Origin: Macrostomum hystrix | Taxonomy: Eukaryota > Animalia > Platyhelminthes | Reading direction: 5' to 3' | Assembly (NCBI GenBank): GCA_950097015.1 | Contig: CATNEN010000030.1 | Span: 2,976,001 to 3,040,000 of the forward strand | DNA length: 64,000 nt | Shown: positions 42,757 to 58,500 of the stretch, piece by piece | Layout of the letters: every line of letters begins with the position of its first letter | How positions within the stretch are numbered: the first letter of the stretch is position 1 | Translations under genes and position numbers: made by a program | Notes under the pieces: model-generated | Database searches by the model: none | What the model was told of the DNA's origin: nothing | Seen by the model: the letters and a program-made list of their open reading frames with translations, nothing else

Positions 42757-45700
42757 TTAAACACTCGTCTCTCGCTCCTCAACCACTTCCACGGTTCCAG
42801 CGGTTCTGCGGACAGTTCCGGCTACGGCTGCGCCAACGTTGGCATCGGAGACGGCGCCGGGCGAGTGGCTGGCGCAGAGGTGCCCAAGCCAGCCCCAGAG
42901 GGGGGTCGCAAGCAGTGCCCGACGGAATTCGGCGTTGGCCGCGAAGTGGGCCGCGGCGGAGGCGGCCATGCTCGCCTTGGCGCACAGCAGGGTGGCCCGC
43001 GACAGAGAGCGGTGAAGCTGGCTGCGCTGATCGATCGGCGAGATCGCCGCGACGGCCGCCGCCATAGCGTAGGGCGTCCAGCACAGCAGGAATGCGCCTG
43101 GAATAATACTTTTATTGCGTTTGAGAAGCGACTTGTATCCTCACATTCAACTTTGAGTAGCCTTGCACTGTCCTCACATTCAACTTTGAGTAGCCTTGCA
43201 CTATCCTCACATTCAACTTTGAGTAGCCTTGCACTGTCCTCACATTCAACTTTGAGTAGCCTTGCACTATCCTCACATTCAACTTTGAGTAGCCTTGTGT
43301 CCTCACATTCAACTTTGAGTAGCCTTGCACTATCCTCACATTCAACTTTGAGTAGCCTTGTGTCCTCACATTCACCTTTGAGTAGCCTTGTGTCCTCACA
43401 TTCAACTTTGAGTAGCCTTGCACTGTCCTCACATTCAACTTTGAGTAGCCTTGCACTGTCCTCACATTCAACTTTGAGTAGCCTTGCACTATCCTCACAT
43501 TCAACTTTGAGTAGCCTTGCACTATCCTCACATTCAACTTTGAGTAGCCTTGTGTCCTCACATTCACCTTTGAGTAGCCTTGTGTCCTCACATTCAACTT
43601 TGAGTAGCCTTGCACTGTCCTCACATTCAACTTTGAGTAGCCTTGCACTATCCTCACATTCAACTTTGAGTAGCCTTGCACTATCCTCACATTCAACTTT
43701 GAGTAGCCTTGTGTCCTCACATTCAACTTTGAGTAGCCTTGCACTGTCCTCACATTCAACTTTGAGTAGCCTTGCACTATCCTCACATTCAACTTTGAGT
43801 AGCCTTGCACTGTCCTCACATTCAACTTTGAGTAGCCTTGCACTATCCTCACATTCAACTTTGAGTAGCCTTGTGTCCTCACATTCAACTTTGAGTAGCC
43901 TTGCACTATCCTCACATTCAACTTTGAGTAGCCTTGTGTCCTCACATTCACCTTTGAGTAGCCTTGTGTCCTCACATTCAACTTTGAGTAGCCTTGCACT
44001 GTCCTCACATTCAACTTTGAGTAGCCTTGCACTGTCCTCACATTCAACTTCGAGTAGCCTTGCACTATCCTCACATTCAACTTTGAGTAGCCTTGCACTA
44101 TCCTCACATTCAACTTTGAGTAGCCTTGTGTCCTCACATTCACCTTTGAGTAGCCTTGTGTCCTCACATTCAACTTTGAGTAGCCTTGCACTGTCCTCAC
44201 ATTCAACTTTGAGTAGCCTTGCACTATCCTCACATTCAACTTTGAGTAGCCTTGCACTATCCTCACATTCAACTTTGAGTAGCCTTGTGTCCTCACATTC
44301 AACTTTGAGTAGCCTTGCACTGTCCTCACATTCAACTTTGAGTAGCCTTGCACTGTCCTCACATTCACCTTTGAGTAGCCTTGTGTCCTCACATTCAACT
44401 TTGAGTAGCCTTGCACTGTCCTCACATTCAACTTTGAGTAGCCTTGCACTGTCCTCACATTCACCTTTGAGTAGCCTTGTGTCCTCACATTCAACTTTGA
44501 GTAGCCTTGCACTGTCCTCACATTCAACTTTGAGTAGCCTTGCACTATCCTCACATTCAACTTTGAGTAGCCTTGCACTGTCCTCACATTCAACTTTGAG
44601 TAGCCTTGCACTGTCCTCACATTCAACTTTGAGTAGCCTTGCACTATCCTCACATTCAACTTTGAGTAGCCTTGTGTCCTCACATTCAACTTTGAGTAGC
44701 CTTGCACTATCCTCACATTCAACTTTGAGTAGCCTTGCACTATCCTCCCATTCAACTTTGAGTAGCCTTGCACTATCCTCACATTCAACTTTGAGTAGCC
44801 TTGCACTATCCTCACATTCAACTTTGAGTAGCCTTGCACTATCCTCACATTCAACTTTGAGTAGCCTTGTGTCCTCACATTCACCTTTGAGTAGCCTTGC
44901 ACTATCCTCACATTCAACTTTGAGTAGCCTTGTGTCCTCACATTCAACTTTGAGTAGCCTTGCACTGTCCTCACATTCAACTTTGAGTAGCCTTGCACTA
45001 TCCTCACATTCAACTTTGAGTAGCCTTGCACTATCCTCACATTCAACTTTGAGTAGCCTTGTGTCCTCACATTCACCTTTGAGTAGCCTTGTGTCCTCAC
45101 ATTCAACTTTGAGTAGCCTTGCACTGTCCTCACATTCAACTTTGAGTAGCCTTGTGTCCTCACATTCACCTTTGAGTAGCCTTGCACTGTCCTCACATTC
45201 ACCTTTGAGTAGCCTTGCACTGTCCTCACATTCAACTTTGAGTAGCCTTGTGTCCTCACATTCAACTTTGAGTAGCCTTGCACTGTCCTCACATTCACCT
45301 TTGAGTAGCCTTGCACTGTCCTCACATTCACCTTTGAGTAGCCTTGTGTCCTCACATTCACCTTTGAGTAGCCTTGTGTCCTCACATTCACCTTTGAGTA
45401 GCCTTGCACTGTCCTCACATTCACCTTTGAGTAGCCTTGCACTGTCCTCACATTCACCTTTGAGTAGCCTTGTGTCCTCACATTCAACTTTGAGTAGCCT
45501 TGCACTGTCCTCACATTCAACTTTGAGTAGCCTTGCACTGTCCTCACATTCAACTTTGAGTAGCCTTGCACTATCCTCACATTCAACTTTGAGTAGCCTT
45601 GCACTGTCCTCACATTCAACTTTGAGTAGCCTTGCACTATCCTCACATTCAACATTGAGTAGCCTTGCACTATCCTCACATTCAACTTTGAGTAGCCTTG

Positions 45701-56463: not shown

Positions 56464-58500
56464 TTAGAGTTCGGACACAAGCAGGCGCATTGGTGACGCG
56501 CTGACTGTCGGATCCTGCGAATAGGCCTGAGCAGACAGCTCCAAGGCGATGTTGTCATCCGAGTTGCTGTCAGCGGGGTCAGCGGTGGCGTAGGCAGTGT
56601 CAGCTGTTCCATCAGCGGTCCTGGCCTCCGGATTAGCGTCGAAAATATCTGCGCCAGCATTGTCATCGGCTGCATCCACGGCGGCGTCGACCAAAGCGAC
56701 AGTGGAGCGGCAGCCGCAGCAGCGGCCGAGGCAGTCCCAAAGCGGGCTGGCCAGCAGGGCCCGACGGAACTCGGCGTTGGCAACGAAGTGGGCCACCGCA
56801 GAGGCGGCCATGCTGGCCTTGGCGCACAGCAGGGCGGCCCGCGTCAGGCAGCGGTGAAGCTGGCTGCGCTGCTCCATCGGAGAGATCACCGCGACCGCGG
56901 CCCCCACGGCGTAGGGCGTCCAGCACAGCAGGAAGGCGCCTGCACGGTGTAGAAGATGCGACAGAAACTTAATTACTGAGGAGAACGGCCGCTACGGTTA
57001 GGCTTAGGTCCCTGAGTTCGATTCCGCGGCGGGGCCACATTCTTTTTTGGGGCGCAGCCGCGGAGAGAAGGCTTGTGTGGCTTGTGTGAGTGTGTGCCCT
57101 GCGTACAGTATCTGTGTGCGTGTGTGCTCAGGAGTCAGCGGAATGAACAGAATTGTCTCCTCGCTGCCTGCGGGTCTAACTGTCACCAAATGATTGCCCA
57201 CATGCCCTCCTGCAATTATTTTTGTCTTTATACTGTACGAATTTGTGGCACAAAAAGTGATCAGAGGTCAGAGTTGATCAAGGATACAGAAGTGCACTCA
57301 TAATGCATCGCCTACTAATCACGCAGACGATGTGGACGGCTACGTGCCGGTCGCGGATCGACCGGTTCTGAGTCTGTAGAAGGCTGCTAGTGCGGCGCTG
57401 CCGACCCAACTGCAATTTAGATTTTCGATGGCCAAATGATAGAGCAAGGTTGGATGCACAAGTCGCAGTTTTTTAACACCTGCTCAACTGTATTTTTCGT
57501 CCTCATTTTTGCCTGATTCAAGCAAAACATGTAATTTTCGCTTGTCTGTCAGTTTGACTTTTGCCTCAAAAATTAGTCTCAAAACTTTGTCTCTTTGGTT
57601 CATCAGCTCTGAAGTATTCTTCTTGAAGTAATTTCTGGGATTCTGTCATAGATGAGCAATTTATTTATTAAACTCGCACCTAATTCCCACAGACAGACAG
57701 ACAGACAGACAGACACCCAGCACAGACAGACAGACAGACAGACACCCAGCACAGACAGACAGACAGACAGACAGACAGACAGACAGACAGACAGACAGAC
57801 AGACAGACAGACAGACAGACAGACAGACAGACAGACAGACAGACAGACAGACAGACAGGCTGCGTACGTGAGCGAAGATCTTCCAGTAGGCGACGCAGAT
57901 GATGCCTAGGGGCAGCAGGAACTGGCCGCTGAGCAGACACAGCCAGTAGGCTCTGTCGCCCGGTTGTCTGCTGGTCCAGTTCAAGTCGCAGGTGGACACG
58001 GAGCGGACGGCCACCACACGGGAGTCGCCGATGGCAGTTGGTAGAATCCAGGCCAGAGAAGCGGTCACGATGACGAGGATGCAGCGGACGGCAGTGCGGG
58101 TTGTCAGGCTGCGGCTGGTCAGGACGGAGCGGCAGCGCAGAGCGGACAGCGCAGCCAGCAAGTTCAGCGACGTGAGTCCTGTCCAGCCAGTCCAGAAGAC
58201 GTACCAGCGGCAGTACCAGGCGGGGAAGCGCCAGTCAGTTCGCCAGGCGGCCTGGACGTTGAGCAGTCCGGCCAGCACGCTGCACAGGAAGTTGCTGATG
58301 AAGCTGCAGCACAGCAGCCAGGCGAATCCGTTCCACAGCGACTTTGTAGCCAGGTGGGTGTACACGGCGAGTCCGTTGGCGACGATGGCGACTGCAAAGA
58401 TGGCGCTGAAGGACACCGCGTCAACGTAGCCCTCCAGGACAGTCGGCAGGTCCTCCAGCTCATCAGGGTTTGGCGTCACTGTGTTCACTTCCGTTACCAT
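56464..58500 (-). CDS. Opsin-like class A GPCR, paralogue 2, about 400 aa, 3 exons
   Basis: Exons 58500-57868, 57409-57316, 56939-56464 (phases 0, 1; 1203 nt). Same intron positions as paralogue 1; FLLCWTPYA, Lys296 in LLCAKAS, NAEFRRAL; CCGC (possible palmitoylation) after helix 8; longer acidic tail. Confidence 0.88.
56975..57222 (+). mobile_element. SINE family A copy with internal deletion, opsin-2 intron 2
   Basis: ggtccctgagttcgattccgcgg...gggcgcagccgcggagagaaggctt joined directly to the 3' region, ending ctcctgcaattattt. Confidence 0.75.
57690..57857. repeat. (GACA)n microsatellite with cccagcac interruptions, opsin-2 intron 1
   Basis: Directly follows the donor, as in paralogue 1. 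Confidence 0.95.

What the first reader, a model, noticed from the sequence alone, without database searches (positions are those of the whole stretch)
42757..58500. Tandem opsin pair keeps the retinal-binding Lys296 but has lost both G-protein activation switches
Seen in sequence: counting from C110 and K296 (bovine rhodopsin numbering; K codons at 42976-78 and 56818-20), both genes align without gaps across these segments. E134-R135-Y136 reads L-R-C, N302-P-x-x-Y306 reads S-A-A-A-H (copy 1) or S-A-V-A-H (copy 2), and D83 is N. N55, W103, the C110/C187 pair, G121, CWTPY and helix-8 NAEFRRAL are intact. Established knowledge: NPxxY and E/DRY are core class A activation microswitches; retinal photoisomerases (RGR, retinochrome) have eroded NPxxY; an N-x-Q/E-F-R helix 8 resembles ciliary opsins and xenopsins rather than r-opsins (HPK). 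Inference: these may be retinal-binding proteins with non-canonical or no G-protein signalling, such as a photoisomerase or retinal carrier independently derived from a xenopsin/c-opsin-type gene. The changes are shared by diverged exon-3 copies with intact frames, which argues for selection rather than decay.
Basis: partly seen in the sequence, partly recalled or inferred. Interest (0 to 1): 0.85.

Follow-up and report, generated by a model that had tools for sequence, protein, structure and literature searches.

The report
Divergent tandem xenopsin genes in Macrostomum
Two neighbouring, intact flatworm genes belong to the xenopsin branch of light-receptor proteins and keep the lysine that binds retinal, but they have lost most residues that normally relay activation to a G protein, as papers have already noted for other flatworm xenopsins.

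Summary
Two three-exon genes lie in tandem on the minus strand: copy 1 at 42757-47524 (363 aa) and copy 2 at 56464-58500 (400 aa). All splice sites are GT..AG and both frames are intact.

Both copies keep K296, C110/C187, G121, CWTPY, R135, Y223 and helix-8 N-A-E-F-R. They read L-R-C for E/DRY, S-A-[AV]-A-H for NPxxY, N for D83 and V for the E181 counterion. A Macrostomum lignano homologue (about 42% identical) shares every one of these states except Y306, which it keeps. Exon 3 is under purifying selection (omega 0.23). So this is a conserved family, not decay.

Exon 1 alone, searched against 1.8 billion proteins, finds essentially only opsins. Both introns match xenopsins in position and phase (6 codons after Y223, phase 0; the codon 6 before W265, phase 1). 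They do not match the c-opsins, the r-like opsin or the intronless cnidops-like genes I mapped. Xenopsin profiles score best. The trees are unresolved because the branch is long, and AU tests reject nothing.

The functional reading (photoisomerase, or weak or no G-protein signalling) is untested. It repeats a published hypothesis for flatworm xenopsin clade B. "Lost both switches" overstates the case, because R135 is kept. No RNA run was listed.

The parts
46865..47524 (-). Copy 1 exon 1: N-terminus to the end of TM5. Holds N55, N at position 83, C110, Y at 113, G121, L-R-C, V at 181, C187, D at 188 and Y223.
   Evidence: ORF; Pfam 7tm_1 at E 2.3e-10; donor CAC|GTACGC, phase 0.
46325..46415 (-). 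Copy 1 exon 2 (91 nt): intracellular loop 3 and the start of TM6.
   Evidence: Acceptor TTTCAG|TTG and donor ATCG|GTACGA, phase 1; homologous to the M. lignano exon in P0113.
42757..43097 (-). Copy 1 exon 3: TM6 (CWTPY), TM7 (K296, S-A-A-A-H), helix 8 (N-A-E-F-R), C-terminal tail and stop codon.
57868..58500 (-). Copy 2 exon 1. It differs from copy 1 at only 3 of 600 nt downstream of the PDELEDL codons.
   Evidence: Pfam 7tm_1 at E 1.2e-11.
57316..57409 (-). Copy 2 exon 2 (94 nt).
   Evidence: Acceptor TTGCAG|TTG and donor ATTA|GTAGGC, phase 1.
56464..56939 (-). Copy 2 exon 3: TM6, TM7 (K296, S-A-V-A-H), helix 8, a longer acidic C-terminal tail and stop codon.
42976..42978 (-). K296 codon (AAG) of copy 1.
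56818..56820 (-). K296 codon (AAG) of copy 2.
47129..47137 (-). L-R-C in place of E/D-R-Y in copy 1 (copy 2: 58132-58140).
42946..42960 (-). S-A-A-A-H in place of NPxxY in copy 1 (copy 2, S-A-V-A-H: 56788-56802).
43138..46246 (.). A 33-bp minisatellite (about 97 copies) that fills intron 2 of copy 1.
46454..46855 (.). A (GACA)n microsatellite at the start of intron 1 of copy 1. The same repeat lies at 57689-57858 in copy 2.

Best explanation
Identity (about 0.85). These are two tandem paralogues of a very divergent opsin subfamily of the xenopsin lineage, in a Macrostomum flatworm genome. Each is a three-exon gene with the two xenopsin-type introns.

What the proteins keep: the seven-helix scaffold, the C110-C187 disulfide, G121, the CWxPY rotamer region, the Schiff-base lysine K296, R135, Y223, an N-x-E-F-R helix 8, and cysteines placed where helix 8 is usually palmitoylated.

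What they have replaced: the polar network that couples the retinal site to the cytoplasmic face (D83 to N, E134 to L, N302-P303 to S-A, Y306 to H) and the usual E181 counterion (to V).

Function (inferred, not shown; about 0.4). Each protein still binds retinal through K296 but does not go through the canonical activation cycle. It would then serve in retinal handling or photoisomerisation, or as a weak or atypical signaller. This is what has been proposed for flatworm xenopsin clade B.

Exon 1 of the two copies has been homogenised recently, while exons 2 and 3 diverged under purifying selection.
For: Gene models are intact with canonical splice sites. Pfam 7tm_1 matches.

Exon 1 carries no TM7 lysine, yet searched against 1.84 billion representative proteins it gives 112 hits at E<=1e-3. 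Almost every full-length hit in which TM7 could be located has K at 7.43. Named hits are xenopsins, cnidops and c-opsins.

Intron 1 lies after Y223+6 in phase 0, and intron 2 lies in the codon 6 before W265 in phase 1. The same holds in both copies, in the M. lignano homologue, and in the Lingula (XP_013397676) and Pecten xenopsins. Exon 2 is 91-103 nt in all of them. Two c-opsins have introns at G121, Y223+9 and after NxQ instead. A Lingula r-like opsin has introns elsewhere. Cnidops-like genes are intronless. Sixteen short fragment hits end by reading through the same first intron.

The xenopsin HMM scores 160-165 bits, against 138-146 for c-opsin, 130-148 for cnidops-like and 117-132 for r-opsin. 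The 67-row ML tree puts the clade inside a 15-row xenopsin set with support 95/93.

The M. lignano homologue PAA90994.1 shares L-R-C, N83, V181, D188, K296, S302-A303 and N-x-E-F-R. For exon 3 (TM6 to helix 8), dS is 0.405, dN 0.094 and omega 0.23, with Fisher p 1.2e-4.

The literature makes the same inference for xenopsin B (PMC6805122, PMC7529461).
Against: The sequence phylogeny is not robust. The stem branch is about 2 substitutions per site. AU tests do not reject grouping with c-opsins (p 0.37) or with r-opsins (p 0.37). A 41-row tree leaves the clade unresolved at the base, and not with flatworm xenopsin A.

No expression or splicing evidence was obtained: no RNA run was listed.

Retinal binding is inferred only from a conserved Lys, and no standard counterion (113, 181, 94 or 292) is present.

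R135, Y223 and helix 8 are retained, which argues for some cytoplasmic partner. GPCRs with non-canonical NPxxY can signal (PMC9368030).

Flatworms already have retinochromes (PMC10097855, PMC9368030), so a second photoisomerase is not obviously needed.
Confidence: 0.55

Rival explanations
1. They are still light-activated signalling receptors. The retained R135, Y223, helix 8 (N-x-E-F-R) and palmitoylation cysteines would engage a G protein or arrestin, and compensatory changes would replace the lost E134/NPxxY network. Loss of E134 might even raise basal activity.
For: R135, Y223, F313 and R314 are conserved in both copies and in M. lignano. Purifying selection covers TM7 and helix 8. PMC9368030 reviews cases (MT2 melatonin receptor, the NAxxY rhodopsin mutant) in which a non-canonical NPxxY still signals. 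Canonical xenopsins couple to Gi/Go (PMC6805122, PMC10729476).
Against: N302, P303 and Y306 are all replaced in the window genes, along with D83 and E134. No other opsin among 64 has S302 or H306. No receptor I know of signals with this combination (my own knowledge).
Confidence: 0.28
2. They are light-independent receptors (chemo-, thermo- or mechanosensory, or orphan), and K296 is an inherited residue that no longer binds retinal.
For: No acidic residue lies at any known counterion position. Sequence divergence is extreme: the best hit outside Macrostomum is 26-31% identical. Light-independent opsin roles are documented (reviewed in PMC9368030).
Against: K296, W265, Y268, G121 and the disulfide are all conserved at about 42% overall identity. 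An Asp next to C187 is conserved and could act as a counterion (inference).
Confidence: 0.12
3. They are opsins, but not of the xenopsin lineage (for example, highly derived c-opsins or r-opsins), and the intron match is convergent.
For: AU tests cannot reject c-opsin or r-opsin grouping. The 41-row tree is unresolved.
Against: Two introns match xenopsins in both position and phase, with a similarly sized exon 2. None of the c-opsin introns is present. The xenopsin profile scores best.
Confidence: 0.08
4. They are decaying pseudogenes or assembly duplicates.
For: Motif loss is extensive. Exon 1 is nearly identical between the copies. The region is rich in repeats.
Against: Both frames are intact across three exons with canonical splice sites. 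Omega is 0.23. The same derived residues occur in another species. Exons 2 and 3 and the flanks differ between the copies, so this is not an assembly duplicate.
Confidence: 0.03

Closest known systems
Flatworm xenopsin clade B (Prostheceraeus vittatus B1/B2, Stylochus ellipticus B; Vocking 2017, Rawlinson 2019, Doring 2020)
   Same: These are flatworm opsins that keep K296 but have strongly modified NPxxY and no VxPx tail. The literature proposes that they do not signal and may be photoisomerases (PMC6805122, PMC7529461).
   Different: The polyclad B sequences read D-S-x-I-Y or D-P-L-I-F at NPxxY and A-L-P-E-I-R or nothing at helix 8 (text of the PMC6805122 supplement). The Macrostomum genes read S-A-x-A-[HY] and keep N-x-E-F-R. 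P. vittatus B1 keeps E181; these genes do not. Whether they are orthologous was not tested, because those sequences had no reference id here.
Canonical xenopsins (Maritigrella crozieri xenopsin A, Limax xenopsin, Lingula XP_013397676)
   Same: The two-intron gene structure is the same in position and phase, exon 2 has a similar size, the xenopsin profile gives the best match, and helix 8 is of the N-x-[QE]-F-R type.
   Different: Canonical xenopsins have DRY, NPxxY or DPxxY, and E or D at 181. They form blue-sensitive bistable pigments that activate Gi/Go (PMC6805122, PMC10729476). The window genes lack all of these motifs.
RGR opsins and retinochromes (photoisomerase-type chromopsins)
   Same: They have K296 with a derived NPxxY, and are thought not to drive a G-protein cascade (PMC9368030).
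   Different: They belong to a different opsin lineage. RGR reads NAxxY and retinochromes read [VY]PxxY, and all keep Y7.53. As I recall, they use E181 as counterion. The window genes lose N, P and Y as well as E181, and they have xenopsin-type introns.
Ciliary opsins
   Same: Helix 8 has an N-x-Q-like pattern. The first intron lies only 3 codons away from the c-opsin intron at Y223+9.
   Different: The c-opsin introns at G121 (phase 1) and after NxQ (phase 0) are absent. The TM6 intron is absent from c-opsins.

Membership tests
Opsin (retinal-binding class A GPCR) | 7tm_1 fold | tested here: met
   Pfam PF00001 matches exon 1 at E 2.3e-10 (copy 1) and 1.2e-11 (copy 2).
Opsin (retinal-binding class A GPCR) | Lys at 7.43 (K296) in TM7 | tested here: met
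   AAG codons at 42976-42978 and 56818-56820. They align with K296 of 64 opsins and of the M. lignano homologue.
Opsin (retinal-binding class A GPCR) | Nearest relatives are opsins rather than other GPCRs | tested here: met
   The exon-1-only HMMER search gave 112 hits, and almost every full-length hit in which TM7 could be located carries K7.43. No non-opsin outgroup was available for a rooted tree.
Opsin (retinal-binding class A GPCR) | Forms a retinal Schiff-base pigment | not testable with these tools
   This needs expression and spectroscopy. No standard counterion is present.
Xenopsin | [quoted passage not shown] | tested here: met
   Intron 1 lies at Y223+6 in phase 0 and intron 2 in the codon at W265-6 in phase 1. 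This holds in both copies, M. lignano, Lingula and Pecten. The pair is absent from 2 c-opsins and 1 r-like opsin.
Xenopsin | Falls inside the xenopsin clade in a phylogeny | tested here: inconclusive
   The 67-row tree places it inside the xenopsin set with 95/93 support. AU tests do not reject c-opsin or r-opsin grouping, and the 41-row tree is unresolved.
Xenopsin | NPxxY and an NxQ-type tripeptide (clade A signature) | tested here: not met
   NPxxY reads S-A-[AV]-A-H. The tripeptide reads N-A-E, which is NxQ-like. Published clade B members also fail this test.
Xenopsin clade B (flatworm) | Groups with polyclad xenopsin B sequences | not tested
   The sequences were visible only as text in a paper supplement. 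They had no reference id, so they were left out of the trees.
Xenopsin clade B (flatworm) | K296 present; NxQ and C-terminal VxPx absent (Rawlinson 2019) | tested here: inconclusive
   K296 is present. I saw no VxPx in either tail when reading the models. An N-x-E-F-R helix 8 is retained, unlike in the polyclad B sequences.
RGR / retinochrome | Membership of the chromopsin clade | not tested
   My trees held no named RGR or retinochrome reference. The gene structure and best profile point to xenopsin.
RGR / retinochrome | Photoisomerase activity (all-trans to 11-cis) | not testable with these tools
   This needs HPLC isomer analysis.
Ciliary opsin | Three conserved c-opsin introns (G121 phase 1; Y223+9 phase 0; after NxQ phase 0) | tested here: not met
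   None is present in the window genes. All are present in the Branchiostoma and fish c-opsins.

The most novel reading that the evidence does not exclude
A Macrostomum-specific xenopsin offshoot has rebuilt the chromophore site: E181 is lost, and a conserved Asp at position 188, next to the disulfide Cys, serves as a relocated counterion (or the Schiff base stays unprotonated and absorbs UV). The same proteins have dismantled the whole D83 / E134 / NPxxY activation network. That would make them a photoisomerase or retinal store that arose inside the xenopsin lineage, independently of RGR and retinochrome, in an animal where transgenesis is possible.
Probability: 0.15. Interest if true: 0.75.

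Novelty: new variant of a known kind. Interest (0 to 1): 0.5.

Why it matters
Xenopsins are central to the debate on how ciliary and rhabdomeric photoreceptors evolved, and flatworm "clade B" xenopsins with eroded signalling motifs are a published puzzle with no functional data.

These genes extend the xenopsin lineage to Macrostomorpha. A recent genome survey reported only r-opsins and retinochromes in the flatworm genomes it analysed (PMC10097855).

They also show a more extreme state than those described: E134, D83, N302, P303 and E181 are lost in both Macrostomum species, and Y306 also in the window species, while K296, R135 and helix 8 stay under purifying selection.

As I recall, M. lignano can be made transgenic and has single-cell data. 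If so, the question of whether a second, independent opsin photoisomerase exists, or how an opsin works without a standard counterion, could be tested directly.

As it stands, this is a solid annotation plus a hypothesis that others have already voiced. It is not a new principle.

Tried and rejected
- Word-indexed homologue searches with exon 1 and with the M. lignano protein found nothing. A profile search returned opsins but not the polyclad xenopsin B sequences.
- A PDB sequence search gave only weak, non-discriminating hits: galanin receptor and squid rhodopsin at about 1e-5.
- The ESM Atlas feature search returned generic class A GPCR clusters.
- A synteny check between the window and the M. 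lignano locus found only the opsin exons and shared repeats.
- RNA evidence: the look-up of sequencing runs listed no run.
- AU tests against c-opsin and r-opsin grouping were inconclusive.
- Polyclad xenopsin B sequences could be read in the PMC6805122 supplement. I did not type them into any tool, so orthology with clade B stays untested.
- Structure prediction was not run. The spliced protein has no reference id, and the tool returns no coordinates for measuring the distance from D188 to K296.
- The idea that the two copies are one gene with alternative exons was rejected. Each copy has its own three exons in order, with its own start and stop codons.
- No further copies or exon fragments are present in the window.
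Full report
**What is there**

ORF listing and six-frame translation show two near-identical long ORFs on the minus strand, at 47524 and 58500 downwards. They encode the N-terminus to TM5 of a class A GPCR. 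Two shorter ORFs carry CWTPY, a Lys in an A-K-A-S context and N-A-E-F-R. Pfam 7tm_1 matches all four pieces.

A small middle exon was missing from these ORFs. I found it as a conserved reading frame present in both introns (R-D-R-H-V-A-[IV]-H-I...). It is confirmed by the annotated Macrostomum lignano protein PAA90994.1 (P0113), whose junction ...A-I-I-G|A-F-L-L-C-W-T-P-Y is the same.

The spliced models are:
- copy 1: 47524-46865, 46415-46325, 43097-42757 (363 aa)
- copy 2: 58500-57868, 57409-57316, 56939-56464 (400 aa)

All four introns are GT..AG. Intron 1 is phase 0 and intron 2 is phase 1. No other copy or exon fragment exists in the window.

The K296 codons are at exactly the stated coordinates. 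The other claimed residues are also present:
- Kept: N55, W103, C110, G121, C187, CWTPY, and N-A-E-F-R-R-A-L.
- Changed: N for D83, L-R-C for E/D-R-Y, and S-A-A-A-H (copy 1) or S-A-V-A-H (copy 2) for NPxxY.

I compared these positions with 64 other K296-bearing opsins:

| Position | Window genes | Occurrence of that state in the other 64 |
|---|---|---|
| 134 | L | 0 |
| 302 | S | 0 |
| 306 | H | 0 |
| 303 | A | 1 |
| 83 | N | 2 |

Two points need adding. First, R135 is retained (as in 54 of 64), and C at 136 occurs in 6 of 64, so only the acidic residue of E/DRY is distinctive. Second, the E181 counterion (E or D in 58 of 64) is V here. Position 113 is Y, as in most invertebrate opsins. Positions 94 and 292 are N and L. 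An Asp directly follows C187, which is rare (2 of 64).

**It is a conserved family, not decay**

The nearest protein in 1.84 billion representatives is a M. lignano fragment. I extended that gene on its contig (locus L001) to a 376-aa model. It is about 42% identical to the window proteins.

It nevertheless shares L-R-C, N83, V181, D188, K296, S302-A303 and N-x-E-F-R. Only position 306 differs, where it has Y. It also has the same two introns, plus one extra intron in TM3.

Divergence between the two window copies differs by exon:

| Region | dS | dN | omega | Note |
|---|---|---|---|---|
| Exon 3, TM6 to helix 8 | 0.405 | 0.094 | 0.23 | Fisher p 1.2e-4 |
| Exon 2 | about 1.7 (near saturation) | 0.51 | about 0.3 | |
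| Exon 1, from PDELEDL | 0.013 | 0.002 | 0.17 | only 3 differences in 600 nt |

Other agents identified the genome as a Macrostomum. My nearest-relative result and a shared repeat element are consistent with that.

**Is it an opsin, and which kind?**

Exon 1 contains no TM7. Even so, it gave 112 hits at E<=1e-3, and almost every full-length hit in which TM7 could be located has Lys at 7.43. Named hits include:
- Tripedalia cnidops
- Lingula, Owenia, Maritigrella, Prostheceraeus, Schmidtea and Sepia xenopsins
- amphioxus c-opsin

.

The clearest evidence is gene structure. Vocking et al. [quoted passage not shown] I mapped the following genes:

| Gene | Introns found |
|---|---|
| Lingula XP_013397676 (a published xenopsin) | 6 codons after Y223, phase 0; codon 6 before W265, phase 1; exon 2 = 103 nt |
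| Pecten relative of xenopsins | same two introns; exon 2 = 94 nt |
| Window copies 1 and 2 | same two introns; exon 2 = 91 and 94 nt |
| M. lignano homologue | same two introns, plus one in TM3 |
| Amphioxus c-opsin and fish VAL opsin | G121 (phase 1), Y223+9 (phase 0), after NxQ (phase 0); none in TM6 |
| Lingula r-like opsin | two introns, both elsewhere |
| Two cnidops-like genes | intronless |

Sixteen of the short fragment hits from the exon-1 search end by reading through a donor site at Y223+6.

Group profile HMMs rank as follows:

| Profile | Bits |
|---|---|
| xenopsin | 160-165 |
| c-opsin | 138-146 |
| cnidops-like | 130-148 |
| r-opsin | 117-132 |

**Limits of the phylogeny**

- The quick 95-row tree put the clade weakly beside cnidops.
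- The careful 67-row tree nests it in a 15-row set of xenopsins with 95/93 support.
- AU tests do not reject forcing it with c-opsins (p 0.37) or with r-opsins (p 0.37).
- A 41-row tree with Schmidtea and Sepia xenopsins added leaves it unresolved at the base. It is not with the well-supported flatworm xenopsin A group.

The stem branch is about 2 substitutions per site and the amino-acid composition is deviant. I therefore rest the xenopsin assignment mainly on the introns and profiles. I leave the subgroup (A, B or its own) open.

**What the literature already says**

- Rawlinson et al. [quoted passage not shown]
- Doring et al. [quoted passage not shown]
- The polyclad B sequences, read in the Rawlinson supplement, have D-S-x-I-Y or D-P-L-I-F and no N-x-x-F-R helix 8. 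Their changes differ from those here.
- Vocking 2017 listed only an r-opsin for M. lignano.
- De Vivo et al. 2023 (PMC10097855) found only r-opsins and retinochromes in the flatworm genomes they surveyed.
- I found no paper describing a Macrostomum xenopsin.
- Guhmann et al. 2022 (PMC9368030) document NAxxY in RGR and [VY]PxxY in retinochromes. They warn that a non-canonical NPxxY does not prove lack of signalling.
- A canonical xenopsin (Limax) is a bistable pigment absorbing at about 475 nm that activates Go (PMC10729476).

**How it most likely works**

Shown: these are intact, conserved and selectively constrained xenopsin-type genes. They keep K296 and the chromophore-pocket landmarks. D83, E134, N302, P303, Y306 and E181 are replaced.

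Inferred: retinal is still bound. The water-mediated network from the retinal site to the G-protein site is gone, so canonical activation is unlikely. The protein then acts in retinal handling or photoisomerisation, or signals weakly or atypically through the retained R135, Y223 and helix 8.

Without a standard counterion, the Schiff base is either unprotonated (absorbing UV) or balanced by D188. This is speculation and could not be tested here.

**Verdict**

In novelty, this is a new variant of a known kind.

No expression evidence could be obtained.

Noticed in passing
window 46686-47469 versus 57689-58472: Exon 1 plus the first part of intron 1 is 97.5% identical between the copies, with only 3 differences in 600 coding nt. 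Exons 2 and 3 have dS of 0.4-1.7.
   Followed up: partly
window 46982-46984 and 57985-57987; L001 (M. lignano): An Asp directly after the disulfide Cys187 (C-D-L-N-W and C-D-L-D-W) is conserved in the clade and rare in other opsins (2 of 64). E181 is V and position 113 is Y. The Asp could be a relocated counterion.
   Followed up: partly
L001 8662-9926 (M. lignano NIVC01000099.1): The M. lignano homologue has an extra 1.26-kb intron (phase 2, inside a Trp codon two residues after C110) that the window genes lack. The public protein model PAA90994.1 misses the first 125 residues as a result.
   Followed up: partly
window 43138-46246, 47784-49237, 49562-50658, 51935-52498, 52772-53583, 54037-54673: The introns and the 9-kb spacer between the two genes consist largely of long minisatellite arrays with periods of 16-34 bp. 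The array in intron 2 of copy 1 is 3.1 kb. These arrays create very long spurious ORFs on both strands.
   Followed up: partly
window 42357-42635 and 57006-57198: A repeat element of about 200 bp lies just downstream of copy 1 and, in inverted orientation, just upstream of exon 3 of copy 2. No tRNA gene was called by ARAGORN.
   Followed up: partly
window 1846-15471 (+), 18925-21351 (+), 24037-25380 (+), 29381-31144 (-): The neighbouring genes are a TRPM-type channel (SLOG and ion-transport domains), an aldehyde dehydrogenase, an FHA/G-patch protein and a single-exon DEG/ENaC (ASC) channel. A TRP channel and an aldehyde dehydrogenase lying near opsin genes may be coincidence.
   Followed up: partly
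same genome, 2.74 Mb before this window (note s1-306166): Another first-reader note reports a further opsin with the Schiff-base Lys but no canonical counterion or switch motifs. It is probably a third member of this family. I did not see it.
   Followed up: no
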